NCBI GenBank assembly: GCA_002269645.1
Contig: NIVC01003370.1
Coordinates: forward strand, 1-51,045
Source: Macrostomum lignano
Taxonomy: Eukaryota
Direction of reading: 5' to 3'
DNA: 51,045 nucleotides
This document shows positions 4,206 through 51,045 of this stretch, in pieces (the first letter of the stretch is position 1; each line of letters begins with the position of its first letter). The notes under the pieces are model-generated. The model made no database searches. It saw only the letters and a program-made list of their open reading frames with translations, and was not told the origin of the DNA. The position numbers were made by a program, and so were the translations under genes.

Positions 4206-4945
4206 AATTTGTCACAAAACCAAGCCAACAGTCACAACACGCTTGTCAGAGTGATGAAGGCAGCACAGCAGCAGCATGGAGCACCATGAAGGGAATCCAA
4301 ACGGCACCAGCGCCTCTCCTGCAGGGCACCAACCACTTTGACCAGAGGATCGCCCGAGAAGAGACAAACTGCTCCGGCTGAGGACTCTTCAATGCCAGAC
4401 TGCGGAGATCGACCTCTTTGGAATGCTTCGAGTCATCGTGCCTTTTCTACTCTGACCCTCTTTCTTCACAATCCTTTGTGTCCACCTTTGTCCGTCTAGG
4501 GGTGAGGTGTTCCGGCTGCTTTAACAATGCGCATCCGCGTCTGTATAAAGGGTTTCCTCTTTCCTGTCAAGTTGTGCTTGGTTATTAGGGTGTTAGATTA
4601 CCCAATTTTTTGGGCCTTCAGACTCATGTTAATCATAAGGGTTTTCATAGCATTCATAGTTGAGCAAACATCCTGTTTTGCTTAAAAGTGCCTTGGCGTA
4701 ACGAAAGATCACTTCTAAAAAAGCTAAGAGCGCATACTTAAAAGAGCGTTTACGGCTCGTATTCTATGGTCACATTGCAGCTTTTGTCTCTGCTGAAGTC
4801 ACAGCAGCAAAGAGCAAGGCTACATCTTTTTAGAAATGGCTCTATTCCAGCAATGCAGAATCCAGCTGTAAATAATAGCATCTGCAGTTTTATAAAATCC
4901 CCACAAGAAAGTTTTTGCTTTGGGCAAAGCTCTGCTGCTTGAAGC

Positions 4946-26100: not shown

Positions 26101-27951
26101 TGTCTAACAGCGCCTTCACACTTCTGCCATCAAGCTTGCACTCACACTGCGATAGTCGGTCGGGCGCGACGCTGCATCCGTCGAAGATCCCGCCGACTGT
26201 GAGCGCCGGCCTTGAAGCCGCTGCTGCTGGGCCCGCAGTTACTGCTGGCCGGGGTTGCGGGCCCGCACACCCCAGCCTCTGGCGTTTCCCGGCTGTCGCC
26301 TGCTGTAGCAATCTCTGGCAATGTGGCCGGCCTTGTGGCAGTTGTAGCAGATGATGTCAGACTTCGAACGGTGCTGCGGTCTCGTTGTGCTGCTCGTCCT
26401 CACTCCACAGGCTGCCAGCTGCTGCAGCTGGGAACTCAGGGTGCTCACCGATGCCTGCAGACTCTGCACAGTGTCCCGCAGCTCCTGAACTTCGCTGGAT
26501 TGGCTCGACTGAGGTTGCACCGCTGCTGCTGGGATGCTTGGCGAGCTGTGCTGCATCAGTAGCTGGGCCTTTTGAAGCGCTTGCTCTGAGGTCTTAACGC
26601 TGGAGTCCGCGCGAATCTGCCAGCTCACGGATTCGGGAAGGCCACAGACGAACTGATGGAACAGCAGAGCCTCTTGAGCATCTTTGTTGTCCACGGAGGA
26701 GCTTTTGAGCATCTTCTTTAACTCGTAAAGATACATGCGTGGAGTCTCATTCGACAAAATCTTCCTTGATTTGAACGCCTCCATGACGGCGAAGTGCTCG
26801 CGGTTCGGGTGGAATGCATCATCCAATGCCTGGACTACTTTGTCGTAGTCTGCCTGATCTCCTGCCGACAGTTCCAAATAAACGACGAGAGCCTCGCCAT
26901 CCAAAAATGTGGCCAGTCGCTCCGCTTTGCACGTGTCCCACTTGTTGACTTTTGCGCATACATTGAAACGCTGCAGCCATTCCTTAAAGTTGCCGGTACT
27001 GAAAACTCTGGGCAGCGCTGCACTGGCGGTCAAACCTTTCTCAGCCATTCTAGAATAATTTGCTCTGCTACCAGTTGTAGACTAAGGCAGAGAGATACAA
27101 CTGAGAGTTGACGAAGCCTCTTGGCGTTTATTAGATCGATACGCAGGTTAAATACGATACAACAATTGTTACATAACTGGGTATAAAAGATAGAGACAGG
27201 GGTGGGTGAAAAGCACGTACATGCTGTACAATAGCAACCCCCACCCCGCTCTAGCGACTGGCGCATACAAGTACACTTGCAACTCACTACACAGGTGAAG
27301 AGAGGGCACAGGTGAAGAGAGGGCACAGGTGAAGAGAGGGCACAGGTAAAGTAAGGGCACAGGTGAAGAGAGGGCACAGGTGAAGAGGGCACAGGTGAAG
27401 AGGACACAGGTGAAGAGAGGGCACAGGTGAAGAGAGGGCACAGGTGAAGAGAGGGCACAGGTGAAGAGAGGGCACAGGTGAAGAGAGGGCACAGGTGAAG
27501 AGAGGGCACAGGTGAAGAGAGGGCACAGGTGAAGAGAGGGCACAGGTAAAGTAAGGGCACAGGTGAAGAGAGGGCACAGGTGAAGAGAGGGCACAGGTGA
27601 AGAGAGGGCACAGGTGAAGAGAGGGCACAGATAAAGAGAGGGTTACTGTGGACATGAACCTGTATCATAAGCCTGAACTGAAATTGCAGACATTCTGCTT
27701 CACCCGGGATCCGCTGTACTCATACATCAGGGGAGCCTTGGGCCGCCTCATGCCAGAGGATATTCAGTAAGCCGCTGACTCATGCTGATTTTTTTTCAAA
27801 TTTTAACCCTCGCATTGTTTAATGAACACTGCTCAATTGCAGCGTCAACGGAGTGCTGTCGCTGATCCCAGAGTTCCAGTCAGCCTTCAGCTGTCCTGCT
27901 GACTCAGCGATGGTGAAGCTAGGAGGCTGCAGCCCAATTTTCTATACCTGA
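14135..27951 (+). CDS. Neprilysin/ECE-like (peptidase M13) type II membrane protein, predicted catalytically inactive, ~782 aa, 12 exons
   Basis: Exons 14135-14401, 15959-16393, 16488-16538, 17158-17319, 17414-17658, 18278-18503, 20293-20469, 20705-20987, 21341-21486, 21860-22030, 27690-27766, 27843-27951 (2349 nt, phase-consistent). N-terminal TM; CQTEAC...[17 protein letters not shown]; NYLNWQV; KIGY; [11 protein letters not shown]; VNGVLS...EFQSAFSCP. Confidence 0.9.
14424..15890. repeat. 11-bp minisatellite (ACCGATTCCCC family) filling M13 intron 1
   Basis: More than 120 units with CCCC/CCTT/CCCA variants; a ~110-bp higher-order duplication lies near the 3' end. Confidence 0.96.
16655..17146. 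repeat. 17-bp minisatellite in M13 intron 3, ~29 copies
   Basis: Unit GAGAGTACACAGGGTCA; the array ends 11 nt before the acceptor. Confidence 0.96.
17750..18235. repeat. 22-bp minisatellite in M13 intron 5, ~22 copies
   Basis: Unit ACACAGGATTTACCCGCTACAG, with 21-bp variants. Confidence 0.96.
18780..20198. repeat. CT-rich low-complexity array in M13 intron 6
   Basis: About 1.4 kb of CTCTCTCC/CTCTCCG/CTTCAT motifs, almost entirely pyrimidine on the + strand. Confidence 0.95.
20511..20653. repeat. 20-bp minisatellite in M13 intron 7, ~7 copies
   Basis: Unit AGATT(G/A)GAATGTGTCACTCT. Confidence 0.92.
21019..21210. repeat. 22-bp minisatellite in M13 intron 8, ~8 copies
   Basis: Unit GGGATTCCGATGGGACTCCAGT. 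Confidence 0.92.
21489..21798. repeat. 30-bp minisatellite in M13 intron 9, ~10 copies
   Basis: Unit GAG(T/G)GATTCTGTGGGGCAGGGCTGCTGGCT, beginning inside the splice donor. Confidence 0.95.
22078..22584. repeat. 18-bp minisatellite in M13 intron 10, left part
   Basis: Unit GGGCACAGGTGAAGAGAG with 16-bp variants; interrupted by the LTR element. Confidence 0.96.
22585..22800 (-). repeat. 3' LTR, preceded on the - strand by a polypurine tract (GGGGAGGAT)
   Basis: 216 bp, TG...CA termini; PPT immediately adjacent at ~22801-22809. Confidence 0.95.
22957..26311 (-). CDS. pol: Gypsy pol (protease, RT, RNase H, integrase) with a frameshift in the integrase core
   Basis: ALLDTGS protease; [14 protein letters not shown] and FFDD in RT; FTDASG RNase H; H-x4-H...C-x2-C and DIV/SDQG in integrase. 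The frame changes near 23671 and resumes as [24 protein letters not shown]..., ending at 22957. Confidence 0.92.
26239..27048 (-). CDS. gag: Gypsy gag, 269 aa, CCHC zinc knuckle
   Basis: [14 protein letters not shown]; starts just after the PBS and overlaps pol. Confidence 0.92.
   Translation of the reverse strand: MAEKGLTASAALPRVFSTGNFKEWLQRFNVCAKVNKWDTCKAERLATFLDGEALVVYLELSAGDQADYDKVVQALDDAFHPNREHFAVMEAFKSRKILSNETPRMYLYELKKMLKSSSVDNKDAQEALLFHQFVCGLPESVSWQIRADSSVKTSEQALQKAQLLMQHSSPSIPAAAVQPQSSQSSEVQELRDTVQSLQASVSTLSSQLQQLAACGVRTSSTTRPQHRSKSDIICYNCHKAGHIARDCYSRRQPGNARGWGVRARNPGQQ
26243..26290 (-). promoter_or_regulatory. Programmed -1 ribosomal frameshift signal (G GGA AAC + downstream hairpin)
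   Basis: Slippery heptamer at 26290-26284 in the gag frame; the -1 frame gives KRQRLGCAG of the pol ORF. Downstream GGGGT-G-TGCGGG/CCCGCA-ACCCC can form a stem. Confidence 0.8.
27062..27074 (-). promoter_or_regulatory. Primer-binding site, tRNA-iMet type
   Basis: TGGTAGCAGAG(C) on the - strand next to the 5' LTR; complementary to the ...CUCUGCUACCA end of metazoan initiator tRNA-Met. Confidence 0.8.
27076..27291 (-). repeat. 5' LTR
   Basis: 216 bp; 214/216 identical to 22585-22800. Confidence 0.95.
27292..27630. repeat. 18-bp minisatellite in M13 intron 10, right part
   Basis: Same GGGCACAGGTGAAGAGAG unit as 22078-22584. Confidence 0.96.
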
Positions 27952-29089
27952 ACTTGTTGCTTCAAATCCAGCGCTTTCGATTTTCGACTGTCGGAAACTG
28001 CAGTCCAACACGTGAATGTGCATGAAACTGAAGTTAGAATGATTTTACAATAATTTTCTTTGTAAGCCCAATTCTCGCAAGTAATTGATTTACATGCCTA
28101 TTTCGTTGCCGTGTCAATGCGAGAACCTCATAATATTGTTGTGCACCTTCTGAGGAAAAATACAGTATGTACAAGTTTTGAATTAAAACCACTTCCGAGG
28201 CCTGCAGCCTTAGCGTGTTTTAAGGTGCAGCGGTAACGAGCCTGAATTAGGTTTATGGCAGCGTGCCAACCATGCCAAGCTTTCAAAAGAGACTCGTTTT
28301 AAATACGTACAACAAAAAACTTCCACAAGAAAGCGACAATTGCATTCAATTTCAAACAGTGGGCTTTAAAAAGACTATTCCTGTTGTTCTGTCTATGGCT
28401 GAGACTTCAAGAAGTCCAATCAATTCCGACACGTTCGATTGATCGAAATTCTTTCGCTGGACAATCGTTTTGCTCAATACTTGGTGGATAGCATTGAGGC
28501 CAAAGACTAAAAAGTGGGCAAAGCATTGGCTTGGTCTTGGTGCGTGTAGGCTGTGGTTTAATGCGATTTATTGTGTGCAACCGATGGTTTTCGACCATAG
28601 ACACTTCAGTGAGCCTTACAGGGCTTTTATCATGGACTTCTATACTTAGCATAGAGTAGAGCATCAGTCGTCATCTTGGCGACAAAAGCAAAGATAGGAC
28701 AGGATCGATCTACGTGTCTTAGCAGCATGATCTGACAGCTGTGCTTGGCCGTGTGCTCAAATGCCAGCTTTCCCTATACGGGACTGCAGTCTGGCATCGG
28801 CCGCCATTGTGGTAACCTCTAAGGACGTACAGTGAGGCTCCGGAGTCGCAGTGCAACCGGGATTGCGGCGACCCAGGGACGACTCAATACTACACAGTGT
28901 AAGACACCCTAAGATGCTATTTCATAGGATGTCTTACACTGAGCAGGTTGACGCAGCGCGCAGGGCTCCAATGGGCCCTGGGCCCCAGAGAGAGCAGAAT
29001 AACACAATGACTTACGAGCCGGGGCCCGGGCCATGAGAGAAGCGACCCGCTGCGTCGTAGGCGACTCCAGCTGGCAGGCCGCATCATCC

Positions 29090-30230
29090 GCGCCTGTCAG
29101 CGCCAGTGCAGGAGTTGCTGCTGCTAACAGGTGTGCAATCGGAGTTTCGTTGAGTGCCTGTTGGCACTCCCGCTCTGTGGAGGTCCAGAAAGATGGACCG
29201 CAAGGTGGAGTCCTCAGCCCGATTTTCTGGAACTTGGTTTTGGACGAGTTGCTCAGCAGCCCGTACCCGGATCTGGTTCAAAAGATCGGCTATGCCGACG
29301 ATGTTACCGCCACTGTGGCAGGACCAACACCCGCGGTCCTAAGAGACCTCCTCCAAGCCTTCATCCACAGTGCCGAGCGCTGGGCAGACAGCTGTGATCT
29401 CAGGTTCTCTGAGTCTAAAACCATGGCCATCATATTCACCAGCCACCGAAACTGCAGGATTGAACCGCTCTCCTTCTATGGCAAACCCGTTGCCATGGAG
29501 AAACAAACCAGATGTCTGGGCGTCACCTCGACCACAGGTCCAAACCAAAGCAAACAAAGCTCTCGCAGATCCGCAGAGCTTTCGGCGCTACCTGGGGCCT
29601 TACCCCCGCCTCTGGTGAATTCACACTGCCATTGTTAGACCGGCCATCTCCTTAGCCGGCTTCATTTGAAACAGTGCCCTAGAGGTGAAAGGGGTCCTTG
29701 ATGCTCTTAACAGGGTGCAAGGCCGCGCTTGTCGAGCTATCATGAGCGCGGCTCCCTCCACGCCGTTTGCTGGCATGAACTCCTTCCTGGACATTCCCCC
29801 CTTGACATCTTTATCAGCGGAGAGGCAATGAAGACCACCTAACGTCTGCTTGACGCGGGTGTCCCAATCCAGAAGCAGTTCGCCTTTAGAAAGCGGAACC
29901 TCTGGCCGCACGGCCATCAGCTTCTGCGCCATGGAGCTGTACAATCAGTGCGCCTGGGTGAAGGAAATTACCCCCAGTACATTCTGTGGAGATTACCCTT
30001 TACTCAGAGAGTTAAGCAGCGACCCACGCCTGTGAGCGCACAACCACCTGCTCGCGTAGAGTCAAGTAAGTCAAGTTCATTGCAACCCATATGGAATTCC
30101 GGCCGATTCACCTACGGCAGAGTCCCACCACCTGTAAACACAATCTATGAACTCTCACTAGGCTCCATGGAAATTCCACGGCTTTCCCTGCTAGCCTCTG
30201 CTATATGTTATATAGTATAATTATTACTAA
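29090..30230 (+). mobile_element. Decayed non-LTR retrotransposon RT fragment (R1/LOA-like)
   Basis: PQGGVLSPIFWNLVLDELL, GYADD, RCLGV, HTAIVRPA and RACRAIMSAAPSTPFAGMNSFLDIPPLDIFI in shifting frames. Clade assignment is by motif resemblance only. Confidence 0.8.
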
Positions 30231-37983: not shown

Positions 37984-40900
37984 TCAGTCGCCTCCGGCGT
38001 CCCTGCAGCGGCGGCACAGAATCGCCGCCCGAGCCCCAGCGGCATCAGCGGCGAGGCTGCGCACCCGGCAGTTGGCCAGCAGCGGCTGCAGCTCCTCGTT
38101 GCCGCCGCCGGCCTCCTCCAGCAGCAGCGTCAGCAGCTCGCCGTACCGACCGCCATCATCGTCTGCCGCCTCGGCCTTCGTCGCCACCAGCGCCCAGCCG
38201 CTGCCAGCGCAGACGCTGCCGACTGCCAGCGAGGAATTCGGCAGCCGCAGCGGGCCGAAGCCGGCAGCGCAGCCGCGGCCAGCAGCCAGGAGGCGGCCGC
38301 TGGTCAGCAGCAGCAGGCAGCGATTGCCAGCGATGGAGGCCGCGGCCACCGACTCCTCCGGCTGCTCGAGCGGCACCGGCAGGAGCTCCAGCTGCGGCAG
38401 CAGCGGCCTGGCGGACTCCGGCAGGCCCAGGCGGCCGAACCGGTTCCAGCCGGTCCCCAGCAGAGCGGCCTGCGAGCCCTCGGTCTCGGCCGCGATCAGC
38501 AGCGCCTCAGGCCCGGCGAAGGCGGACAGGGCTCGGTAACGGCCAGACGGCATCGGCAGCAGCGTCGGGAACGTTGCCGACACTTCGGCGCCAGCTTCGG
38601 CTGCGGGCAGGCAGCCCCAGGCGAACACCTCACCGGAGGAGGCGACGCAGGCGGCGAAACGGCGGCCGCAGGCGACTGAAGTCACCGAGACCTGCGCGAG
38701 CGAGCCGACAACGCGGGGTCGCTCGAGGTCGGCGACGTCGCCGTGGCCTGAGAGAGAGGTTGGGGTTTCAAATCTGCTTTTCTGAAAAAACTAGGATCTT
38801 CAGGATCTTCAGGATCGCCAGGAACCTGGAGTCCCGCACTGGGTCAGCCCAGAGTCCCGCACTGGGTCAGCCCAGAGTCCCGCACTGAGTCAGCCCAGAG
38901 TCCCGCACTGGGTCAGCCCAGAGTCCCGCACTGAGTCAGCCCAGAGCTGCTCACCCAGAGCGCCATCCCTGCCGCAGCCGAAGGTGAGCACAACGCCTGC
39001 ATCGGTCAGGCAGGCAGCGAAGCGGTCCCCGCAGTCCAGCTGGACAACCCTGAAATTATCCAGGCCGACAATGTCGGACATCAACCAGCTGCAGGGAGGC
39101 TGGCCAACCTCCCCGCCAGGCCGGTCCCACCGCACCAGCCGGTCGCGCTTGGTCAGGCCGATCAGGCAGTCGCCGCTGATGAGTTTCACGCATCGCAGAT
39201 CCTCGTGCGGCAGATCGTAGGCGATCTCCGACAACCGGTGGGAGTCTTGGTCCGGCCCGGCGGTGAACAGGTACAAAGACCTGTTGCCGCTCTCCTGGGG
39301 GGGGGGAGCAGATATGCGCATCGGTTACTACTGAAATTAACCAGGTGTGAGGTCACATCATTAGCGCCGAGTCGCTCTGCTCACAGCAGACGCAGGTGCT
39401 GCTGCAGGCACCCTACTGGCGGCAACAGGCGCGCACTCGGCGTTTCGACGACTGCCTGCTGGCTGACGCTGGCGCCCCGGATTCAGTCGGCGGCGTGGTC
39501 TTACTTCGCGGTATTGTGTGTTGTGTTATTGTGTTGTTGTGGTATGGTGTTGTTGTGGTATTGTGTTGTTGTGGTATGGTGTTGGTGTGGTATTGTGTTG
39601 TTGTGGTATTGAGTTGGTGTGGTATTGTGTTGGTGTGTTATTGTGTTGTGTTATTGTGTTGGTGTGGTATTGTGTTGGTGTGGTATTGTGTTGTTGTGGT
39701 ATTGAGTGTTGTTGTGGTATTGAGTGGTGTTGTGTTATTGTGTTGTTGTGGTATTGAGTTGGTGTGGTATTGTGTTGGTGTGTTATTGTGTTGTTGTGTT
39801 ATTGTGTTGGTGTGGTATTGTGTTGTTGTGGTATTGTGTTGTTGTGGTATTGTGTTGTTGTGTTATTGTGTTGTTGTGGTATGGTGTTGGTGTGGTATTG
39901 TGTTGGTGTGGTATTGTGTTGGTGTGATATTGTGTTGTTGTGGTATTCTGTTGTTGTGTTATTGTGTTGTTGTGGTATGGTGTTGGTGTGGTATTGTGTT
40001 GGTGTGGTATTGTGTTGGTGTGGTATTGTGTTGTTGTGGTATTGAGTGTTGTTATGGTATCGAGTGTTGTTGTGTTATTGTGTTGGTGTGGTATTGAGTG
40101 TTGTTGTGTTATTGTGTTGTTGTGGTATTGTGTTGTTGTGTTATTGTGTTGTTGTGGTATGGTGTTGGTGTGGTATTGTGTTGGTGTGGTATTGTGTTGG
40201 TGTGGTATTGTGTTGTTGTGTTATTGTGTTGTTGCGTTATTGTGTTGTTGTGGTATTGTGTTGGTGTGGTATTGTGTTGTTGTGGTATTGTGTTGGTGTG
40301 GTATTGTGTTGTTGTGGTATTGTGTTGGTGTGGTATTGTGTTGTTGTGGTATTGTGTTGTTGTGGTATTGAGTGTTGTTGTGGTATTGTGTTGTTGTGGT
40401 ATTGTGTTGGTGTGTTATTGTGTTGTTGTGTTATTGTGTTGGTGTGGTATTGTGTTGTTGTGGTATTGTGTTGGTGTGGTATTGTGTTGTTGTGGTATTG
40501 AGTGTTGTTGTGGTATTGAGTGGTGTTGTGTTATTGTGTTGGTGTGGTATTGAGTGTTGTTGTGTTATTGTGTTGTTGTGGTATTGTGTTGTTGTGTTAT
40601 TGTGTTGTTGTGGTATGGTGTTGGTGTGGTATTGTGTTGGTGTGGTATTGTGTTGGTGTGGTATTGTGTTGTTGTGGTATTGTGTTGTTGTGTTATTGTG
40701 TTGTTGTGTTATTGTGTTGTTGTGGTATTGTGTTGGTGTGGTATTGTGTTGTTGTGGTATTGTGTTGGTGTGGTATTGTGTTGTTGTGGTATTGTGTTGT
40801 TGTGGTATTGAGTGTTGTTGTGGTATTGTGTTGGTGTGGTATTGTGTTGGTGTGTTATTGTGTTGTTGTGTTATTGTGTTGGTGTGGTATTGTGTTGTTG

Positions 40901-43900
40901 TGGTATTGTGTTGGTGTGGTATTGTGTTGTTGTGGTATTGAGTGTTGTTGTGGTATTGAGTGGTGTTGTGTTATTGTGTTGTTGTGGTATTGAGTTGGTG
41001 TGGTATTGTGTTGGTGTGTTATTGTGTTGTGTTATTGTGTTGGTGTGGTATTGTGTTTTTGTGGTATTGTGTTGGTGTGGTATTGTGTTGTTGTGGTATT
41101 GAGTGTTGTTGTGTTATTGTGTTGTTGTGGTATTGAGTATTGTTGTGTTATTGTGTTGTTGTGGTATTGAGTGTTGTTGTGTTATTGTGTTGTTGTGGTA
41201 TTGAGTATTGTTGTGTTATTGTGTTGTTGTGGTATTGAGTGTTGTTGTGTTATCTTAAATGCCCGACCAGGCCTCACCCGGCACCGCAGTCGCTTCACCG
41301 TGGTGGCCAGCTTGGCCCTGCTGGACTTCTTGGTGCGCTGCTTTTTCAAGCCAACGCAGCCGAGGTCGGTGAGCAACGGGAACAGGTTGCTCAGGATGAG
41401 CGGGTGCGACAGCAGCTGCGCCGCCGAGGGCCGCTCGAGCGGGTCCACCTTCAGCATCTTGGAGATGAGGTCCGACATCAGTGGGGAATATCTGAAAGAA
41501 TTAAAAACAGAACTACATGTGAATTTCTAATTAGTGTGACACTGCCAGTTCTGACTAGTGTGACACTGTGCCAGTTCTGACTAGTGTGACACTGTGCCAG
41601 TTCTGACTAGTGTGACACTGTGCCAGTTCTGACTAGTGTGACACTGTGCCAGTTCTGACTAGTGTGACACTGTGCCAGTTCTGACTAGTGTGACACTGTG
41701 CCAGTTCTGACTAGTGTGACACTGTGCCAGTTCTGACTAGTGTGACACTGTGCCAGTTCTGACTAGTGTGACACTGTGCCAGTTCTGACTAGTGTGACAC
41801 TGTGCCAGTTTTGACTAGTGTGACACTAACTAGTGTGACTAGTGTGACACTGTGCCAGTTCTGACTAGTGTGACACTAACTAGTGTGACCAGTGAGGTGC
41901 GACATGGCGCTGTGGTATCTGTGAACCCCATAGCCCGAGAGCGCATCAAGCCAGCAGCGCCGCACCTGCGCGGGTCGAGGGGCGCCCAGCTGCCAGCGGC
42001 AATCTGGGCCACCAGGAGCAGCAGGGTGTCCGCATCGAACGGCCTGCGCAGGCAGCACATTTCGTACAGGCAGCAGCCGAGCGCCCAGATGTCGCTGGGC
42101 TCCCGGCCAGCTGTGGCCAGCTTGTCCGAGCTGAACACCTCCGGGCTGAGGTAGGCAGGAGTGCCGACCAGCCCGCTGGCGGAGCTGCCTGCAGGGCTGT
42201 CTGCGGGATTGGCGGTGGGGATTGGGGGCGTTCTCAGGAGGGTTGGGGGCGTTCTCAGGGTGGGTTGGGGGCGATTCTCAGGGCGGGTTGGGGGCGATTC
42301 TCAGGGCGGGTTGGGGGCGATTCTCAGAGCGGGTTGGGGGCGATTCTCAGGGCGGGTTGGGGGCGATTCTCAGGGCGGGTTGGGGCCGATTTTCAGGGCG
42401 GGATGGGGGCGATTCTCAGGGCGGGTTGGGGCCGATTCTCAGGGCGGGTTGGGGCCGATTCTCAGGGCGGGTTGGGGCCGATTCTCAGGGCGGGTTGGGG
42501 CCGATTTTCAGGGCGGGATGGGGGCGATTCTCAGGGCGGGTTGGGGCCGATTCTCAGGGCGGGTTGGGGGCGATTTTCAGGGCGGGATGGGGGCGATTCT
42601 CAGGGCGGGTTGGGGGCGATTCTCAGGGCGGGATGGGGGCGATTCTCAGGGCGGGTTGGGGCCGATTCTCAGGGCGGGTTGGGGGCGATTTTCGGGAGAG
42701 TTGGGGCCGATTCTCAGGGCGGGTTGGGGGCGATTTTCGGGAGAGTTGGGGGCGTTCTCAGGGCGGGTTGGGGCGTTCTCAGAGCGGGTTGGGGGCGTTC
42801 TCAGGGCGAGTTGGGGCGTTCTCAGAGCGGGTTGGGGGCGTTCTCAGAGCGGGTTGGGGGCGTTCTCAGGGCGGGTTGGGGGCGTTCTCAGAGCGGGTTG
42901 GGGCGATTTTCGGGAGAGTTGGGGGCGTTCTCAGGGCGGGTTGGGGGCGTTCTCAGAGCGGGTTGGGGGCGTTCTCAGGGCGAGTTGGGGCGTTCTCAGA
43001 GCGGGTTGGGGGCGTTCTCAGAGCGGGTTGGGGGCGTTCTCAGGGCGGGTTGGGGGCGTTCTCAGAGCGGGTTGGGGGCGATTTTCGGGAGAGTTGGGGG
43101 CGTTCTCAGGGCGGGTTGGGGGCGTTCTCAGAGCGGGTTGGGGGCGATTCTCAGGAGGGTTGGGGCGATTCTCAGGAGGGTTGGGGGCGATTCTCAGGAG
43201 GGTTGGGGGCGATTCTCAGGGCGGGTTGGGGGCGATTCTCAGGAGGGTTGGGGCGGTTCTCAGGAGGGTTGGGGGCGATTCTCAGGGAGGGTTGGGGGCG
43301 ATACTCAGGAGGGTGGGGGGCGATTCTCAGGGGAGTTGGGGCGGTTCTCAGAACGGGTTGGGGGCGTTCTCAGAGCGGGTTGGGGGCGTTCTCAGAGCGG
43401 GTTGGGGGCGATTTTCGGGAGAGTTGGGGGCGTTCTCAGGGCGGGTTGGGGGCGATTCTCAGGAGGGTTGGGGCGATTCTCAGGAGTGTGGGGGGCGTTC
43501 TCAGAGCGGGTTGGGGGCGTTCTCAGGGCGAGTTGGGGGCGTTCTCAGAGCGGGTTGGGGGCGATTTTCGGGAGAGTTGGGGGCGTTCTCAGGGCGGGTT
43601 GGGGGCGTTCTCAGAGCGGGTTGGGGGCGTTTTCAGGGCGGGTTAGAGGCGATTCTCAGGGGGTTGAGGGCGTTCTCAGGGCGGCTTGGGGGCGATTCTC
43701 AGGGGAGTTGGGGCGGTTCTCAGGGCGGGTTGGGGGCGGTTCCCAGGGCGGGTTGGGGGCGGTTCCCAGGGCGGGTTGGGGGCGGTTTTCAGGGCGGCTT
43801 GGGGGCGTTCTCAGGGCGGGTTGGAAGCGATTCTCATGCGATTTGGGGATAAGATGGGGCGATTCCAACCCCAACGTCACAACTCAGACGCAGGCTCGCC

Positions 43901-45940
43901 TTTAGCAGGGCTGGTCTGACGCAACGCAGCGAGCCCGAAGTCTGCCAGCTTGCAGACATCGCGGGCGGTGCTGGCCAGCAGGATGTTGTCCGGCTTGAGG
44001 TCGCGGTGCAGCACCTGGCGGCTGTGCAGCTCCTCCAGGGCCAGCAGCAGCTGGCAGGCAAATCTGGCCACGGCAGACTCGGACAGGCCGAGGCCGGACT
44101 GCTGATGAAGCAGGCTGCTGAGCGAGCCGCCTGAGGCGTACTCCATCACCAGGCAGAGCTGCCTGCCGCCGGCGGACTCGTCCAAGAAGCTGTCCAGCAG
44201 CCGCACGATGTTAGGATGCCGCAGGCCGGCCAGGATCTCGGCCTCCTTCAGGAAGGCCTCGCGCTGAAGCTGGTCCGCGCCGCCCAGATCGACTCGCTTG
44301 ATCACCACCTGGCGAGGTCCAGCGAGGACAAGGAGGTTGGACTTCTTTTCTAGTGAACTATCGTCTCCGAATATGAACCGCCATGTATTGCTCTTAGTGA
44401 TTGAATTTGCGAAAGTCACTACTGACTGACGCGGCGGAGGAACGGGTTTACAGGTAGACTTGTCACACCTGAGACCATCGGAAGGTAAAACTTGTCACAC
44501 CTGAGACCATCGGAAGGTAAAACTTGTCACACCTGAGACCATCGGAAGGTAAAACTTGTCACACCTGAGACCATCGGAAGGTAAAATTGTCACACCTGAG
44601 ACCATTGGAAGGTAAAATTGTCACACCTGAGACCATCGGAAGGTAAAATTGTCACACCTGAGACCATCGGAAGGTAAAATTGTCACACCTGAGACCATCG
44701 GAAGGTAAAATTGTCACACCTGAGACCATCGGAAGGTAAAATTGTCACACCTGAGAAAGGACTGTCACGCCTGAGATTGTAAGGACTGTCACACCTGAGA
44801 TTGTAAGGACTGTCACGCATGAGATTGTAAGGACTGTCACGCCTGAGATTGTAAGGACTGTCACGCCTGAGATTGTAAGGAATGTCACACCTGAGATTGT
44901 AAGGACTGTCACACCTGAGATTGTAAGGACTGTCACACCTGAGATTGTAAGGACTGTCACACCTGAGATTGTAAGGACTGTCACACCTAGGATTGTAAGG
45001 ACTGTCACACCGGAGATTGTAAGGACTGTCACACCTGGATTGTAAGGACTGTCACGCCTGAGATTGTAAGGACTGTCACACATGGGATTGTAAGGACTGT
45101 CACACCTAGGATTGTAAGGACTGTCACACCTGAGATTGTAAGGACTGTCACACCTAGGATTGTAAGGACTGTCACACCTAGGATTGTAAGGACTGTCACG
45201 CCTGAGATTGTAAGGACTGTCACACCTGAGATTGTAAGGACTGTCACGCCTGAGATTGTAAGGACTGTCACACCTAGGATTGTAAGGACTGTCACGCCTG
45301 AGATTGTAAGGACTGTCACACCTGAGATTGTAAGGACTGTCACACCTAGGATTGTAAGGACTGTCACACCTGAGATTGTAAGGACTGTCACACCTAGGAT
45401 TGTAAGGACTGTCACACCTGAGATTGTAAGGACTGTCACACCTAGGATTGTAAGGACTGTCACACCTGAGATTGTAAGGACTGTCACACCTAGGATTGTA
45501 AGGACTGTCACACCTGAGATTGTAAGGACTGTCACACCTGGGATTGTAAGGACTGTCACACCTAGGATTGTAAGGACTGTCACACCTGAGATTGTAAGGA
45601 CTGTCACACCTGGGATTGTAAGGACTGTCACACCTAGGATTGTAAGGACTGTCACACCTGAGACTACAGTATCAGGATTCCTCAACATACTCGAGACCGC
45701 AGTGATGTCTCATTAATGATGGTCAGCTGTGAAGGTCACCACTACAGGCCACTGACAGCCCTTAATTTGTTGTCTGTCCGCCAGCCAGTCTCAAAAATCA
45801 CTCCATAGACACACGCGAGCTGCATGGACACACGGACGAACCTTTTCAGGAGTTGAACAGTTTGCCTGGCGCCTCAGGTACAGAGCCACCCGGCCAGCGG
45901 TGCCCTGGTCCAGGTTCTTCAGGTGCCGATAGTTTTCCAT
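37984..45940 (-). CDS. NEK8: NIMA-related kinase with RCC1 repeats (NEK8-like), ~686 aa, 6 exons
   Basis: Exons 45940-45842, 44308-43900 (or -43921), 42200 (or 42188)-41966, 41491-41278, 39294-38955, 38747-37984. Motifs VVIK, HRDLKPDN, DFG, GTPAYLSPE, DIWALG; NEK8-like LLTDLGCV after the kinase; RCC1 motifs CGDRFAACLTDAGVVLTFG and GALGHG. An extra small exon near 39385-39500 cannot be excluded. Confidence 0.8.
38828..38944. repeat. 23-bp minisatellite in NEK8 intron 5, ~5 copies
   Basis: Unit GAGTCCCGCACTG(G/A)GTCAGCCCA. Confidence 0.9.
39511..41250. repeat. 16-bp GT-rich minisatellite in NEK8 intron 4
   Basis: Unit TGTGTTG(T/G)TGTGGTAT and variants, ~1.7 kb. Confidence 0.96.
41532..41890. 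repeat. 26-bp minisatellite in NEK8 intron 3, ~13 copies
   Basis: Unit CTAGTGTGACACTGTGCCAGTTCTGA. Confidence 0.95.
42222..43830. repeat. G-rich 23/24-bp minisatellite in NEK8 intron 2
   Basis: Unit GGGCGGGTTGGGGGCG(A)TTCTCA and variants. Confidence 0.96.
44457..45662. repeat. Compound minisatellite in NEK8 intron 1: 31/32-bp array then 24-bp array
   Basis: TGTCACACCTGAGACCATCGGAAGGTAAAA(C)T (44457-44755) switches to TGTCACACCTGAGATTGTAAGGAC (44760-45662). Confidence 0.95.
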
Positions 45941-46390
45941 TTCATTCGCAGTTCATTTAAACAGAAAAAACCATTTAGGCGCTCTGAATAAGCTGCAGTG
46001 CTGGCTCAATCTCCGTCAGGCTTTGGCATTAACTGCATACTTGAAGGGTTGTCCCTGCTGCTCAGACAAGGCCTGCTTTATCTTCTCCACTGCTAAAATT
46101 GAGTTATTAGCTAAGCAAAATAAATTCACCAAGGCCAAAGACGTGTTCAGTGTGAGTTCCGAATTGCTGACAAATGCAAACACGGTCACAGAATAAACTA
46201 TTCTGCCATTGTATTCATTTCAACAGTTGGGACAGGCAAAGTCAGGGAGCGGGTTGCAAAGACAATAGAAGTCAATCAATCGGTAAATCGGACAGGCCTT
46301 CGAATACGGTGAAGCATAAGAAGCATGGAACCGATTTACAGAGAGACAGGCAGGTCAGCTCAAGCCAAAGTGCAGCCGCAGTCCACAGCT

Positions 46391-48708
46391 TCACTTCTTG
46401 CCCCTGCTGAGCTTCTTCACCTCGCCCTCCTGGTTGCCCAGCGCGCCCATCAGCTCGCGCACCTTCCGCTTGCGCTGCGCGTCCGCCCGCAGCGTCGTCT
46501 CCAGCCGCTCGCCGGCCAAGAAGTCGCGGTCGCGGGCCACCTCGCGCACAGCCGCCTTCATCGCCCGTTTGCGCGCCCGCAGCAGGCGTTTTCGCTCCTC
46601 GCCGCCGCTGCTGTCCGACTTTCGCCGGCCGGGGTCGAAATTGGCTTCGACCTGCGGCTCCAGCAGCTCCAGCATGCGGGGCGGCTCGCGCTCGCGGAGG
46701 AGGCGGGCGCCGGTCGCCTCGGCGGAGCAGTCGGCGAATGAGTTGAGGAAGCTGCGCGATGATGAAGAGTTAAGGAGTAATCGATAATAGAAAAGTTCTT
46801 GATGGATAATTCCTAAATTTAGAATACCTATATAACTTCACAGACAAAACACAGCATTTTATAAATTGACAAGCAGTAGCATTAGCCCCCAAAGAGGGTC
46901 AAGCTGCTAGTCCACTATACAAAATATCCGAGATCAAAATACGAGCAGGCCTTCATGAGACCTGTGAATTTACCTGTCAGCTGCATTCAGAATCTCGGCC
47001 GGCCACAGCCCGCCACCCGCAGCGGCCTTGGCCCGCTCGGCAGCCTCAGCCAGCGGCAGGAAGGCCGCCCGCAGTCCGGCCGACGGCAGGCCGCCGGTGG
47101 CGCCGACGCCGTGCCAGGCGGTGAGCAGCTCGCCAAGGTCGGCGAACACGCGGCCAAGGCAGAGCAGGCGGAGCCCGGCTGCCTGCGAGCTGGCCAGACC
47201 GCTGGCCCGCTGGCACAGGCTGAGCGGCAGCGGTCCCGGCCGCCAGTCCGCTGGGACGGGTCGCGTTGCCAGCAGCAGCTGCTGGCGCCGGCGACGCGCT
47301 GAACTGGCGCCGCTGTCCTCCTCCTGCTCCTCCTCGGTATCCAAGTTCGCGTGAGGAGCTCCGCCACCGTCCCAACGACTGGCGTCAGCTGGCGAGGCCA
47401 TGAGCAGGAGGCTGTGCAGACAGGCCAGGAGCTCCGGGCACAGGGGCCAGTGAAGGGCCGACAGAAGGCGCTTCAACGCCGAGACCAGCAGCAGGATGCG
47501 GCAGATCTGAGGATTCGGTGGAGTTGCTTAGGTAAATCGAACAACAAGAAAATTATCCTACAACCGATTTATTAATATCCCAGATGAAACAGACACAGTC
47601 TACACAAGCTGCTCAGACCTCTTTGAGCCCGTGGGTCTTCGCCGGACGCAGCAGTCTGCCAGCACCTCGGCGCAGAAGGCCACGCCCAGCCTGAGGCAGC
47701 AGAAGCGGCGCGCTTTGAATCCGCTGAGGTTGCACAGCCGCAGGATGAGGCGCACAGTCTCCAGGTAGGGGGCAGGCGGAGCAGCGAGCGCGCCAGACGC
47801 AGAGTGGCCGTCATCAGCGGCGGCGACTCGCTGACGACGCGCACGGCGCAGTCGATCAAGCTTGCTGCACAGCCCCGCCAGCTGCTCGCCAGCAGAGCGC
47901 CGCTCTGACGGCTTCAACTTTGCCTTGGCAACCGAGCCGCCATTGCCGGTGGGAGCGGCGTCCTTAGCAACCAAACGCTGCGACTGCATCAGCTGGTCAG
48001 ACAGCAGCTTGAAGGCGGACAGCTGATCGCCGGACTCCGGAGCCGCCTTCGTCGAAGTCGGCACCGACATCAGCGGACCCAGCTGGAATCGAACCCGAGA
48101 CTTCCACTCGGCGTCGATGGCGTCGGTGAGGCGGCGCGTCTCCTCCAGCTGCTCGCGCTTCTCGGCGCGATCGGCGCGCGTCTGGGCGATCAGCGTCTCC
48201 ATGCGGTCCTTGAGCCCCGTGCCCTTGCGCAGCAGGCCGCCTTCGTCGAACAGCGCCTCGGAAGAATGCGCGCCGCGGCCGGCTCCGGAAGCGTCGTCGT
48301 CGTCAAACTCGGCGTCGTCCAGCTCGGTGGCCAGCGGAGCGAACTTGTTGACAGCCGACAGCAGGCCGGAGTCCTCCGCCTCCGACGGCTGCCGCATCGC
48401 CGCCTCAGCTTCCGCCGCCAGAACGCGACGCTTCTGGCGGCAAAACGGCGCAGCGCCACCTCGGCGGCGGCGTCGGCCACGTCGGCATTGCCGTCGCTGC
48501 CAGCAGCGCCGAGGCGTCGGTCCAGCAGGCCACCTTTTTTAAAACGCCGGCCCAGTTCGGCGCCCAGCGTGCGGCGCCGTTTGGCCAGACGCGGGCGGCG
48601 CCGCGGCCCGGGGCGGCGATGGCCTTGGCTGCCTTGGCAACGCCTTTGACGACGGCGGCTGGACGGCCAGCGCGTGCCATTTGAAGCTTTTGCTGCGGAC
48701 CGCTTCGC
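46391..48708 (-). CDS. NOP14: Nucleolar protein 14 (SSU processome), with an apparent frameshift
   Basis: PG.R...AKRRRTL, LDRRLG, RRFA, METLIAQTR, CPELLACLHSLL, and C-terminal RKRAMKAAVREVARDRDFLA...DAQRKRKVRELMGALGNQEGE match NOP14. Exons ~48708-47612, 47506-46974, 46751-46391. A 1-nt frame break lies at ~48435; the donor near 47612 and the start are uncertain. Confidence 0.85.
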
Positions 48709-49171
48709 CTGGAAGTGGGTGGGAAAGTGAGGACACGGATTCACTCTTGGCCTAGGTACTGTCACTTGCGTCGCCCCAAAGTCGTTGCAGGTCAGCACAG
48801 GTAAGATAGGACTCTAGATCCCGTTGTCTGAGAGATCCCGTTGTTATTGCGACCACAAAACGACTCTGGGGCGATGCAAGTGGACTCTGGGCGCTTTTAG
48901 AATAACTCTGAGGTCGTAGAGTCACGGTAAAATTTTTTAATGGGTGGGCTAGTCTAGCAATCCATTCTAATTCCTTCATCTGATTGTCTAGCCAGATTAG
49001 CGATATATTATACTACTGCAAACAGAAATCGCTGTTGAGATATAAAAAATGCCAAATAAGGTACAAAAAGTTCCAACAGTTGCTATCAATTCAATCGGTA
49101 TCGATCGGAGAGACCGGGAGTACAAATGCACCAAATGGATCTGCTTTATTTAAGACTGAATCGAGCCGCCG

Positions 49172-51045
49172 CTACATATCGGCAGTAAAGCTGAACTTGA
49201 TTGGCCCTCTGCCAGCAGCCGGCGCGGCTCCGGCCTTCTTCTTGTCGATTTTCGCCGCCTTCGCCTCGGCGCCGCCCTCCACAGCGGGGGTGGCAAGGTA
49301 CAGCTGGTCCGTCAGCCGGCGCTTGCTGACGCCCTCGCTGCTGGAGGCCGTCAGGCCCTTGACCACCCGATCCCCAGCGGCTCGGACACTCGACCGGGTC
49401 AGCTCGGACACGCCGGAGAGAGGCAGCAGGCCGGCCAGGCGGCTTTTGGCGTACAGCTGGCACAGCAGCCGCCTGCCGCGAAGGTCGAACACCCGCAGGT
49501 GCCGGTCCTCAGACGTTGCGAACAGCAGGCCGGCGTCGATGACCGCGTCCAGGGCCGTGACAGCGCCGGAGCAGCTCGGCTTGAAGTGGCCCAGCAGCTG
49601 CGCGGCGGCCGCGGCTGGCGACTTTGAAGAGGCAGCTGGCGGGCGGCGAAGGTCGAATAAGCCAAGATGGCCCGCTGAATTGCCCGCCGCGACTGCGGCT
49701 GCCGATGCTGCCTCGATGGCGCAGCAGGACTGCAGGATCAGAGGAAAAATTTATCCTAACTGAAGAAATGAAGCCAGCCTCCCACATCCTCAGTTGCTGG
49801 GCCAGCCTCCCACATCCTCAGTTGCTGGGCAAGCCCCCCCAAATCCTCAGGCTGGGCCAGGCTCCCAGATCCTCAGTTGCTGGGCCAGCCTCCCACATCC
49901 TCCTCAGTTGCTGGGCCAGCCTCCCACATCCTCCTCAGTTGCTGGGCCAGCCTCCCACATCCTCCTCAGTTGCTGGCCAGCCTCCACATCCTCCTCAGTT
50001 GCTGGCAGCCTCCCAGATCCTCAGTTGCTGGCCAGCCTCCCACATCCTCAGTTACTGGGCCAGCCTCCCAGATCCCAGTTGCTGGCCAGCCCCTTAAATC
50101 CTCAGTTGCTGGGCCAGCCTCCCAGATCCTCAGTTGCTAGCCCAGCCTCCCAGATCCTCAGTTCTGGGCCAGCCTCTCAGATCCTACGTTGCTAGCCCAG
50201 CCTCCCAGATCCTCAGTTGCTAGCCCAGCCTCCCAGATCCTCAGTTGCTAGCCCAGCCTCCCAGATCCTCAGTTGCTGGGCCAGCCTCCCAGATCCCCAG
50301 TTGCTAGCCCAGCCTCCCAGATCCTCAATTGCTGGGCCAGCCTCCCAGATCCCCAGTTGCTAGCCCAGCCTCCCAGATCCTCAGTTGCTAGCCCAGCCTC
50401 CCAGCCCCAGTCACCTGAATCGGATACTCGGACCAGGCCAAGTTAACAACAGGCCGCCGCTGCTCGCCAGGCGAGTAGAGCCGCAGCTCTCGGTGGCCGG
50501 TGCACACAGCCAGCAGTTGGCCGCCAGCAATCGGTCTGATGTCGCGCACGTCGACTGGACGGCGAAGGTTCAGCCGGTCGTTGGGCAGATTCTTGGCCTA
50601 GGAAATTTTGGGGGAACAAACAAAGGTTAAAATTGTAGCGGTAGCGTCTAACTTGACAAAAAATGAACCCGAGAATTGTTTATCTGATTTCATCAGATCC
50701 GCATGGATCAAAACCAGCTGCTCACCTGGAACACGCAGGACTCGGCCGCCACATCCCAGACCCGAAGGTCGGACTCGCGACCGCCGGTAGCCAGACGAGC
50801 GTCGCTGTCGCCCCAGGCGCGGACGACGCCAACGTGGCATCCGGCGCGCAGCTGGGCCGCATCGGTGCAGCTGGCAGCGGAGGCGGCGAAGAGAGGCCAG
50901 CCTGACGGTGCCGTCCTCGTGACCAACTGCCAGCAAATCTCTCCGCTCGCCGCTGGAATCCGCCGAGGAACAACAGAAGGTCAGACAGGTCGTGGCGGCG
51001 GCTGGGACCTGCGAGATGGATTTGCACGGACTGGCAGTGTGATGG
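49172..51045 (-). CDS. WDR74: WD repeat protein 74 / NSA1 (60S biogenesis), 5'-partial, with an apparent frameshift
   Basis: LATGGRESDLRVWD, AKNLPNDRLNLRRPV, CTGHRELRLY...QRRPV...EYP, GNSAGHLGLFDLR, LYAKSRL. Exons 51008-50726, 50597-50415, 49729-49172. Frame break at ~50897-50901. Confidence 0.85.
49778..50405. repeat. 28-bp minisatellite in a WDR74 intron, ~22 copies
   Basis: Unit CCAGCCTCCCAGATCCTCAGTTGCT(A/G)GC with +CTC variants; starts next to the donor. Confidence 0.95.

What the first reader, a model, noticed from the sequence alone, without database searches (positions are those of the whole stretch)
48690..48800. NOP14 has no in-frame ATG: start codon may come from the spliced leader
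Seen: the NOP14-homologous frame contains no ATG from its upstream open limit to the frameshift. A strong acceptor CCCACCCACTTCCAG|GCG AAG CGG sits at 48708 in phase 0. Established: the flatworm SL ends in AUG that can act as initiator, and many NOP14 proteins begin MAK. SL-AUG + GCG AAG would give MAKRSAAK. Inference: trans-splicing completes the ORF. Alternative: a cis exon from the ATG at 48979 (donor ACC|gtgact).
Basis: partly seen in the sequence, partly recalled or inferred. Interest (0 to 1): 0.7.

Follow-up and report, generated by a model that had tools for sequence, protein, structure and literature searches.

The report
Flatworm NOP14 start codon from spliced leader
In the flatworm Macrostomum lignano, the ribosome-assembly gene NOP14 has no start codon of its own and very probably takes it from the AUG at the end of the trans-spliced leader RNA, which is a known flatworm mechanism but not one recorded for this gene.

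Summary
The window is scaffold NIVC01003370.1 of Macrostomum lignano (Mlig_3_7). On the minus strand a TTCCAG|G acceptor opens NOP14 exon 1 at 48708, and that frame has no ATG. The window's copy carries four 1-nt homopolymer indels (48673, 48590, 48437, 47630). Against a sister scaffold it shows 6 substitutions but 21 indels in 7.6 kb, so these are most likely assembly errors.

In the two sister loci with an intact 5' end (L001, L002) the frame runs unbroken from the first base after the acceptor, and the first in-frame ATG is codon 105. Those 104 codons are coding:
- 8 of 9 differing codons between the two diverged copies are synonymous, including codons 1 and 3.
- They add 33 bits to the Pfam Nop14 score.

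The RNA-seq annotation, which cuts transcripts at spliced-leader (SL) read peaks, starts NOP14 0-3 nt after this acceptor in three loci and labels the CDS "partial". The species' SL ends in ATG. SL-AUG + GCG AAG gives MAK, and 49 of 77 homologs begin M-x-K.

The cis micro-exon (ATG 48979) is AT-rich and unconstrained. The ATG at 48680 is an artefact of an inserted base.

The mechanism was described in Schistosoma in 2006, so this is a new member of a known kind.

The parts
49172..51045 (-). 3' part of the upstream same-strand gene, a WDR74/NSA1 homolog (60S ribosome-biogenesis factor). Its stop codon TAG is at 49174-49172. The gene is cut off by the scaffold end.
   Evidence: Sister protein P0156 matches human WDR74 (PDB 8fkp) at E 5.8e-23. 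The protein ends ...IKFSFTADM*.
49145..49150 (-). AATAAA poly(A) signal of the WDR74 homolog, 22 nt after its stop codon.
   Evidence: Read directly from the sequence. Invariant in all four loci.
48709..49144 (-). Intercistronic region/outron between the WDR74 poly(A) signal and the NOP14 acceptor, about 436 nt. This is below the 1-kb operon threshold used for this species.
   Evidence: threshold from PMC8629364. It diverges 4.2-7.4% between the diverged copies L001 and L002 and carries 193-nt and 15-nt indels.
48926..48979 (-). TTT ACC | gtgact, encoding MKELEWIARLAHPLKNFT in phase with the acceptor. UniProt model A0A1I8HAC7 uses part of it (48953-48926) as a bridging exon.
   Evidence: GC 0.35, codon score -5.3 bits, 9.3% divergence. 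4 of its 5 substitutions are synonymous, which is a weak hint only.
48766..48811 (-). A second, different bridging mini-exon (PILPVLTCNDFGATQ, donor CAA|gtgaca) used by UniProt models A0A1I8JCN7 and A0A1I8HEF2 to fuse WDR74 to NOP14. Judged an ab initio artefact.
   Evidence: compared.
48709..48714 (-). Trans-splice acceptor hexamer TTCCAG (AG at 48710-48709), preceded by the pyrimidine-rich tcctcactttcccacccac.
   Evidence: Fits the M. lignano trans-splice motif [T/C]TNCAG. The annotated 5' ends of NOP14 in L001, L002 and L003 lie 0-3 nt after it. The same hexamer precedes the annotated 5' end of the WDR74 homolog.
47619..48708 (-). NOP14 exon 1. It begins GCG AAG CGG TCC (A K R S) in phase 0 and ends GAG|gtctgag.
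   Evidence: Pfam Nop14 profile positions 27-209.
48678..48680 (-). Decoy ATG. It is in frame with the coding stretch only in this scaffold, because of the extra G at 48673. In the other loci it is out of frame (AAT GGC).
48673..48673 (-). Extra G (CACGCGCTGG here, CAC-CGCTGG in the three sister loci). It shifts the frame by +1.
48590..48590 (-). Missing G (CGC-GTCTGG here, CGCGGTCTGG in the sisters). It restores the frame lost at 48673.
48436..48437 (-). CC where the sister loci have CCC (GCCG-CCAG).
47628..47630 (-). GGG where sister loci L002 and L003 have GGGG. This is a further 1-nt deletion just before the exon 1 donor.
   Evidence: The sister proteins read PTGLKE|ICR.
48395..48397 (-). 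First ATG in the corrected NOP14 frame (codon 105, ...AEAEAAM). It lies downstream of the conserved N-terminal motif.
46974..47506 (-). NOP14 exon 2 (ICRILLLV ... AEILNAAD).
46391..46751 (-). NOP14 exon 3, with stop codon TGA at 46393-46391. This is the conserved Nop14 C-terminus.
   Evidence: Pfam 65.9 bits, profile positions 769-862.

Best explanation
NOP14 of Macrostomum lignano is the downstream gene of an operon-like, same-strand pair with a WDR74 homolog. Its pre-mRNA is trans-spliced at the TTCCAG acceptor (first exon base 48708) to the species' 35-nt spliced leader, which ends in AUG. That AUG lands in phase 0 directly in front of GCG AAG CGG and serves as the initiator, giving MAKRSAAKASNGTAGRPAAVVKG... 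The genomic gene encodes codon 2 onwards, and the ancestral ATG has been replaced by the splice junction.

Shown here:
- the ATG-less open frame in the two loci with an intact 5' end (L001, L002);
- coding constraint from the first codon after the acceptor;
- the annotated transcript 5' ends at the acceptor.

Inferred:
- that those 5' ends carry the SL;
- that ribosomes start at the SL AUG.

The frameshifts in this scaffold's copy are most likely consensus errors of the long-read assembly, not biology.
For: (1) Identity. The window is the 51,045-bp scaffold NIVC01003370.1 of GCA_002269645.1. Three sister loci were fetched.

(2) Annotated 5' ends. PAA90971.1 starts AKRSAAK at the first base after ...TTCCAG|. 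PAA51138.1 starts 3 nt later and PAA53126.1 2 nt later. All are labelled 'partial'. The annotation pipeline (TBONE) cuts transcriptional units at peaks of SL-containing reads and numbers the resulting genes .g1.g2 and so on under a name prefix that is also shared by clustered similar transcripts. The WDR74 homolog and NOP14 are g2/g3, g1/g2 and g3/g4 at the three loci. The WDR74 homolog's annotated 5' end also sits right after a TTCCAG.

(3) The SL. It ends ...TTGCATG and is followed by GTAAG, and the trans-splice acceptor motif is [T/C]TNCAG.

(4) The open frame. In L001 and L002 the frame is open from the acceptor, and the first in-frame ATG is codon 105. Two out-of-frame ATGs (+29, +221) come before it.

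(5) Constraint. Between the diverged copies L001 and L002, 8 of the 9 differing codons in codons 1-104 are synonymous, including codons 1 and 3. The codon-usage score is +48.5 bits in this frame, against -37 and -66 in the other two.

(6) Family match. The N-terminal 104 residues raise the Pfam Nop14 score from 15.8 to 48.8 bits. Residues 27-205 align with profile positions 27-209, so the numbering is collinear.

(7) N-terminus. Of 77 full-length homologs, 19 start MAK, 19 MGK, 8 MVK and 3 MTK. SL-AUG + GCG AAG restores MAK.

(8) Precedent. In Schistosoma mansoni the SL AUG is in frame in 28% of trans-spliced transcripts, and more than 40 cDNAs need it (Cheng et al. 2006, as summarised in PMC9851317). 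The Macrostomum SL ATG is called a likely start codon in PMC10468722.

(9) Assembly errors. Window versus L002 shows 6 substitutions and 21 indel events (20 of them 1 nt, most in G/C homopolymer runs, in both directions) over 7.6 kb.
Against: - I saw no SL-junction read, 5' RACE product, ribosome footprint or peptide. The trans-splice site is inferred from annotation boundaries and from the published description of the pipeline.
- The first 18 codons after the acceptor are neutral in codon usage (-1.2 bits).
- A cis exon with an in-frame ATG and a GT donor is preserved in both diverged copies, and flatworm acceptors are often shared between cis- and trans-splicing (PMC12582326).
- The copy in this window cannot make full-length NOP14 as assembled.
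- Exact look-ups of M+protein variants found nothing.
Confidence: 0.8

Rival explanations
1. A cis-spliced first exon supplies the start. Transcription begins in the WDR74-NOP14 spacer, and the micro-exon 48979-48926 (MKELEWIARLAHPLKNFT) is spliced from ACC|gtgact to the same acceptor. This adds 18 residues in front of AKRS. It could be the main form or a minor isoform alongside trans-splicing.
For: The ATG, the 18-codon frame and the GT donor are present in all four loci, and the join to the acceptor is in phase. 4 of the 5 substitutions between L001 and L002 are synonymous, which has a probability of roughly 0.02 by my own estimate. UniProt A0A1I8HAC7 uses the donor. Acceptors shared between cis- and trans-splicing are common in parasitic flatworms.
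Against: - GC is 0.35, against 0.68-0.72 in NOP14 coding sequence, and the codon score is -5.3 bits.
- Divergence is 9.3%, at or above the flanking non-coding DNA (4.2-7.4%) and three times that of exon 1 (2.8%).
- The RNA-seq-based annotation starts the gene at the acceptor in three loci, not at this exon.
- Another UniProt model bridges through a different mini-exon, so these junctions look like predictor artefacts.
- The extension would push the family-typical MAK away from the N-terminus.
Confidence: 0.1
2. Translation starts at the first genomic in-frame ATG (48397-48395, codon 105), giving an N-terminally truncated NOP14. The upstream open frame would be an untranslated leader.
For: It is the only in-frame genomic ATG. 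The NCBI annotation could not place a start codon.
Against: - The 104 upstream codons are under purifying selection (8 of 9 synonymous) and have strong coding codon usage.
- They contain the conserved Nop14 N-terminal motif (RRFKKGGLLDRRLG) and add 33 bits to the Pfam score.
- Two out-of-frame ATGs precede this ATG.
Confidence: 0.03
3. The window's copy is a real pseudogene, a decaying duplicate in this hidden polyploid. Its start codon would then be moot, and the ATG at 48680 or the SL AUG would only give truncated products. This concerns only this scaffold's copy and could be true alongside any of the other explanations, so its confidence is not meant to sum with theirs.
For: Four 1-nt indels fall within 1.1 kb of coding exon 1, with a net shift of -2. 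The annotators could call only a 262-aa ORF on this scaffold. The DV1 line carries duplicated chromosomes.
Against: - The window and L002 differ by only 6 substitutions in 7.6 kb but by 21 indel events, most of them in G/C homopolymer runs, in both directions, and in non-coding repeats as well.
- L003 has its own private 1-nt deletion in the same exon.
- This ratio is the signature of long-read consensus error on redundant small scaffolds, not of decay.
Confidence: 0.12

Closest known systems
[quoted passage not shown]
   Same: A flatworm SL ending in AUG is joined in phase 0 to an exon that lacks its own start codon. The SL AUG is required to translate the conserved protein in the correct frame.
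   Different: The species is a free-living, early-branching macrostomorph rather than a trematode. The gene is NOP14, sitting in an operon-like pair. Here there is no in vitro or in vivo translation evidence, only sequence, comparative and annotation evidence.
slORFs: open reading frames created by SL addition, detected with slORFfinder in nematodes, Oikopleura and trypanosomes (PMC9851317)
   Same: The start codon comes from the leader, and standard annotation pipelines miss such ORFs.
   Different: Those cases mostly use near-cognate NUG codons inside the SL and often create new or alternative ORFs. Here a canonical AUG at the very end of the SL restores the ancestral N-terminus (MAK) of a conserved essential protein.
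SL trans-splicing of downstream operon genes in M. lignano (PMC8629364; TBONE annotation, PMC5730564)
   Same: There is an upstream same-strand gene with AATAAA, a spacer under 1 kb, the [T/C]TNCAG acceptor, and genes sharing one name prefix in the annotation.
   Different: In most such genes the SL only provides a 5' UTR. In the WDR74 homolog next door the SL AUG is out of frame and opens an 18-codon overlapping uORF. In NOP14 the SL AUG is the only possible start for the full protein.

Membership tests
Flatworm SL-AUG-initiated mRNA (slORF in the sense of Cheng et al. 2006) | The species has an SL RNA whose exon ends in AUG immediately before the GU donor. | tested here: met
   The organism was identified as M. 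lignano. The published SL is CGGTCTCTTACTGCGAAGACTCAATTTATTGCATG, followed by GTAAG (PMC8629364). No SL RNA gene lies in the window itself.
Flatworm SL-AUG-initiated mRNA (slORF in the sense of Cheng et al. 2006) | The mRNA is SL trans-spliced at the acceptor in question. | tested here: inconclusive
   The evidence is indirect but consistent. TTCCAG fits the trans-splice motif. The annotated 5' ends in three sister loci lie 0-3 nt after the AG, and the annotation cuts at SL-read peaks. The SL-junction reads themselves could not be inspected with these tools.
Flatworm SL-AUG-initiated mRNA (slORF in the sense of Cheng et al. 2006) | The SL AUG is in frame with the conserved ORF, with no stop codon in between. 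| tested here: met
   The exon starts in phase 0 with GCG AAG. In L001 and L002 the frame runs from the acceptor through the whole 661-residue protein. In the window as assembled it is interrupted by 1-nt indels.
Flatworm SL-AUG-initiated mRNA (slORF in the sense of Cheng et al. 2006) | No genomic in-frame AUG could give the conserved N-terminus. | tested here: met
   The first in-frame ATG is codon 105, downstream of the Nop14 N-terminal motif. There is no ATG between the upstream in-frame stop (48816-48814) and the acceptor.
Flatworm SL-AUG-initiated mRNA (slORF in the sense of Cheng et al. 2006) | Translation actually initiates at the SL AUG. | not testable with these tools
   This needs ribosome profiling, N-terminal proteomics or a reporter assay. 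Supporting inference only: purifying selection from codon 1 and restoration of the family's MAK N-terminus.
NOP14 / Utp2 (Pfam PF04147) | Significant match to the Nop14 profile across the N- and C-terminal conserved regions. | tested here: met
   110-122 bits against a cut-off of 34.9. The N-terminal part aligns to Chaetomium Utp2/Nop14 of the SSU processome (PDB 5oql_B) at E 0.02. 199 homologs had E <= 0.001 in the representative library.
M. lignano operon (as defined by Ustyantsev & Berezikov 2021) | Same-strand neighbours, a trans-spliced downstream gene, and a repeat-adjusted intergenic distance below 1 kb. | tested here: met
   The WDR74 stop is at 49172, AATAAA at 49150-49145 and the acceptor at 48709, so the spacer is about 436 nt. 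The two genes carry one name prefix in the annotation. Co-transcription itself was not observed here.

The most novel reading that the evidence does not exclude
NOP14, an essential small-subunit processome gene, has become wholly dependent on SL trans-splicing for its start codon in M. lignano. The acceptor sits exactly at the ancestral codon 1/2 boundary, and both diverged copies (L001, L002) keep it there. If so, ATG-less genes of this kind may be a systematic, uncounted class in Macrostomum. They would currently be hidden as 'partial' CDSs in the NCBI annotation and as false gene fusions in UniProt (A0A1I8HAC7, A0A1I8JCN7, A0A1I8HEF2). The gene would also be a natural reporter for trans-splicing in a transgenic flatworm model.
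Probability: 0.7. Interest if true: 0.4.

Novelty: new member of a known kind. Interest (0 to 1): 0.3.

Why it matters
The mechanism has been known in flatworms since 2006, and Macrostomum authors have remarked that their SL ends in a likely start codon, so no principle changes. Three things are still useful.

1. This is a clean, gene-level case in an early-branching free-living flatworm. An essential, conserved protein cannot be made without the leader's AUG, and the splice junction reproduces the family's MAK N-terminus.
2. It explains concrete database errors. Three NCBI entries are flagged 'partial', one is truncated to 262 aa, and three UniProt models fuse WDR74, NOP14 and, in one of them, a NEK kinase through invented mini-exons.
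3. It warns that small redundant scaffolds of Mlig_3_7 carry homopolymer indels at roughly 3 per kb. These create false frameshifts and, as here, a false in-frame ATG.

Tried and rejected
1. My first hypothesis was that the ATG at 48680 (MARAGRPAAVVKG...) is the true start and is separated from the NOP14 frame by a frameshift. Codon-usage scoring in the window supported it. The sister loci rejected it: the frame continuity is created by an extra G at 48673 that only this scaffold has.
2. Two homologous-protein searches returned nothing, even for the conserved C-terminus. The exhaustive representative search was what found the M. lignano relatives.
3. Exact look-ups of six guessed full-length products (SL-AUG, cis-exon and internal-Met forms of both alleles) found none in the collection. 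This says nothing either way.
4. The Rfam scan of the window and a search for the SL 3' half found no SL RNA gene in the window.
5. Pfam scoring of short N-terminal constructs could not tell the frames apart (24.2 against 25.6 bits).
6. Searches for the gene IDs, and of the supplements for NOP14, in the M. lignano papers gave nothing usable.
7. The 4-of-5 synonymous pattern in the cis micro-exon was considered as evidence for coding. I set it aside because the exon's divergence is as high as or higher than its non-coding flanks and its composition is non-coding.
Full report
**What is at the coordinates**

The feature lies on the minus strand. Reading that strand, a pyrimidine-rich tract ends in TTCCAG, with the AG at 48710-48709. 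The next bases are GCG AAG CGG TCC GCA GCA AAA, starting at 48708. Six-frame translation shows that this frame is open from just after a TAG at 48816-48814 and contains no ATG. It includes LAKRRRTLGAELGRRFKKGGLLDRRLG, which Pfam places at the N-terminus of the Nop14 family. The last exon (46751-46391) matches the Nop14 C-terminus at 65.9 bits, and a bridged conceptual protein scores 110 bits against a cut-off of 34.9.

**A false lead**

An ATG at 48680-48678, 29 nt after the acceptor, opens MARAGRPAAVVKGVAKAAKAIAAPGRGAAR in another frame. I first read this as a genomic start codon plus two frameshifts. The sister loci showed this to be wrong.

**Identity of the window and its sister loci**

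Two word-indexed protein searches found nothing. The exhaustive representative search found one protein at 97% identity. Its cluster holds Macrostomum lignano entries from NCBI and UniProt, including one on a 51,045-bp contig. The window is the whole scaffold NIVC01003370.1 of assembly Mlig_3_7, GCA_002269645.1. Three further loci carry the same gene order, which is a WD-repeat gene, then NOP14, then (where the contig extends far enough) a NEK/RCC1 kinase:
- L001 on NIVC01000099.1;
- L002 on NIVC01003497.1;
- L003 on NIVC01003129.1.

**The frameshifts are most likely assembly errors**

Aligned over 7.6 kb, the window and L002 differ by 6 substitutions but by 21 indel events. Twenty of these are single bases, most in G or C homopolymer runs, in both directions, and in non-coding tandem repeats as well as in exons. 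Four of them fall in NOP14 exon 1 of the window:
- an extra G at 48673;
- a missing G at 48590;
- a missing C at 48437-48436;
- a missing G at 47630-47628.

L003 has its own private deletion in the same exon. An indel-to-substitution ratio above 3:1 is what long-read consensus error looks like on small redundant scaffolds. The assembly is known to contain duplicated sequence. The first two indels are a +1/-1 pair. Between them the true coding frame is displaced, which is why the ATG at 48680 appears to be in frame in this scaffold only. In the other three loci it reads AAT GGC. A real pseudogene copy cannot be excluded without reads, but I rate it at about 0.12.

**The corrected gene has no start codon of its own**

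In L001 and L002 the frame runs from the first base after the acceptor through the whole protein: AKRSAAKASNGTAGRPAAVVKGVAKAAKAIAAPGRGAARGLAKRRRTLGAELGRRFKKGGLLDRRLG.... The first in-frame ATG is codon 105, and two out-of-frame ATGs at +29 and +221 come before it.

The 104 codons in between are clearly translated:
- L001 is a diverged copy (2.8% in exon 1, 4-9% in the spacer, with 193-nt and 15-nt indels). Nine codons differ between L001 and L002 in this stretch, and eight of them are synonymous, including codons 1 and 3 right at the junction.
- The codon-usage score is +48.5 bits in this frame, against -37 and -66 in the others.
- Including these residues raises the Pfam Nop14 score from 15.8 to 48.8 bits.

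A start at codon 105 is therefore very unlikely. The start codon must be supplied by splicing.

**Evidence that the supplier is the spliced leader (SL)**

*The leader.* M. lignano has a single 35-nt SL, CGGTCTCTTACTGCGAAGACTCAATTTATTGCATG, followed in the SL RNA gene by GTAAG. The motif enriched at its trans-splice acceptors is [T/C]TNCAG (PMC8629364). TTCCAG fits that motif.

*The annotation.* The NCBI annotation of this assembly came from a pipeline that assembles transcriptional units and then cuts them at peaks of SL-containing reads and at poly(A) sites. The resulting genes are numbered .g1.g2 and so on under a name prefix that clustered similar transcripts also share (PMC5730564). The WD-repeat gene and NOP14 are g2/g3, g1/g2 and g3/g4 at the three loci. 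The 5'-partial NOP14 CDS begins 0, 3 and 2 nt after the AG in L001, L002 and L003. The neighbouring gene behaves the same way: its annotated 5' end lies directly after another TTCCAG. This supports reading these boundaries as trans-splice sites.

*Frame and product.* The SL ends in a complete codon and the exon starts in phase 0, so the junction reads AUG GCG AAG, or MAK.

*The family N-terminus.* Among 77 full-length homologs from the representative search, 19 begin MAK, 19 MGK, 8 MVK and 3 MTK. With the SL Met as residue 1, residues 27-205 align with Pfam profile positions 27-209. The junction thus sits exactly where the ancestral codon 1/2 boundary would be.

*Context.* The upstream gene is a WDR74/NSA1 homolog (E 5.8e-23 to human WDR74). 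It ends at 49172 and has AATAAA at 49150-49145, about 436 nt from the acceptor. That is within the 1-kb limit used to call operons in this species.

**The cis-exon alternative**

The micro-exon 48979-48926 has an ATG, 18 in-phase codons and a GT donor in all four loci. Four of its five substitutions between the diverged copies are synonymous, which has a probability of roughly 0.02 by my own estimate. Against it:
- Its GC content is 0.35, against 0.68-0.72 in NOP14 coding sequence, and its codon score is -5.3 bits.
- Its divergence (9.3%) is as high as or higher than the flanking non-coding DNA.
- The RNA-seq-based annotation does not use it.

The UniProt models built on the older assembly fuse WDR74 to NOP14 through two different mini-exons. 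A0A1I8HAC7 uses LAHPLKNVT, while A0A1I8JCN7 and A0A1I8HEF2 use PILPVLTCNDFGATQ. A0A1I8HEF2 also runs on into the downstream kinase. That is what an ab initio predictor does when it meets an ORF without a start. A minor cis isoform remains possible, because flatworm acceptors are often shared between cis- and trans-splicing (PMC12582326).

**Comparison with what is known**

All reported flatworm SLs end in AUG. [quoted passage not shown] 2006, as cited in PMC9851317 and PMC12582326). The authors of the M. cliftonense and M. hystrix genomes note that the Macrostomum SL probably contains the translation start ATG (PMC10468722). The present case meets the sequence-level criteria of that class. The two experimental criteria (SL-junction reads, and initiation at the SL AUG) could not be tested here. 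I found no paper that names NOP14 or these gene IDs.

**Verdict**

It is a new member of a known kind. Its practical value is in explaining mis-annotations and in flagging homopolymer indels in this assembly. Interest: 0.3.

Noticed in passing
window 43391-51045 (minus strand); L001-L003: Three same-strand genes sit close together: a WDR74/NSA1 homolog (60S biogenesis), NOP14 (40S biogenesis) and a NEK-type kinase with RCC1 repeats. The two ribosome-biogenesis genes are annotated under one name prefix, which suggests a functionally coherent operon.
   Followed up: partly
window 43500-50900 compared with L002 (NIVC01003497.1): Two near-identical scaffolds differ by 6 substitutions but by 21 indel events, 20 of them 1 nt, in 7.6 kb, most in G/C homopolymer runs. 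This points to about 3 consensus indel errors per kb on small redundant Mlig_3_7 scaffolds, enough to break ORFs and create false in-frame ATGs.
   Followed up: yes
L005 1493-1560 (5' end of the WDR74 homolog on NIVC01000099.1; not inside the window): The annotated 5' end lies just after a TTCCAG acceptor. If it is trans-spliced there, the SL AUG would be out of frame and would open an 18-codon uORF overlapping the real ATG 12 nt downstream. This contrasts with NOP14 next door.
   Followed up: partly
UniProt A0A1I8HAC7, A0A1I8JCN7, A0A1I8HEF2 (P0001, P0159, P0158): Predicted proteins from the earlier assembly fuse WDR74 + NOP14 (+ the kinase in A0A1I8HEF2) by skipping stop codons through tiny invented exons. 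In window coordinates these are 48953-48926 or 48811-48766.
   Followed up: yes
window 23405-27048 (minus strand): This looks like a Ty3/gypsy-type LTR retroelement. One 968-aa ORF has protease, reverse transcriptase, RNase H and integrase domains, and it is preceded by a 269-aa ORF with a CCHC zinc knuckle. LTRs were not looked for.
   Followed up: no
window 29033-29638 (+) and 20729-21310 (+): There is an isolated reverse-transcriptase fragment (RVT_1, E 1e-9), and an ORF with a peptidase M13 (neprilysin-like) match (E 5.8e-8) that overlaps a 22-nt tandem array.
   Followed up: no
whole window; for example 2838-4206, 14425-15893, 39510-41253, 42222-43836, 44452-45663, 49773-50404: Short-period tandem arrays are extremely dense (36 TRF rows with score >= 200, periods 4-100 nt, up to 169 copies). 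Some appear to lie inside introns of the kinase (44452-45663) and of the WDR74 homolog (49773-50404). Several long 'ORFs' in the mechanical list are just these repeats.
   Followed up: no
window 47617-47618: The NOP14 intron 1 donor is GAG|gtctga, which departs from the species' GT[G/A]AG consensus. Intron 2 has gtaaat.
   Followed up: no
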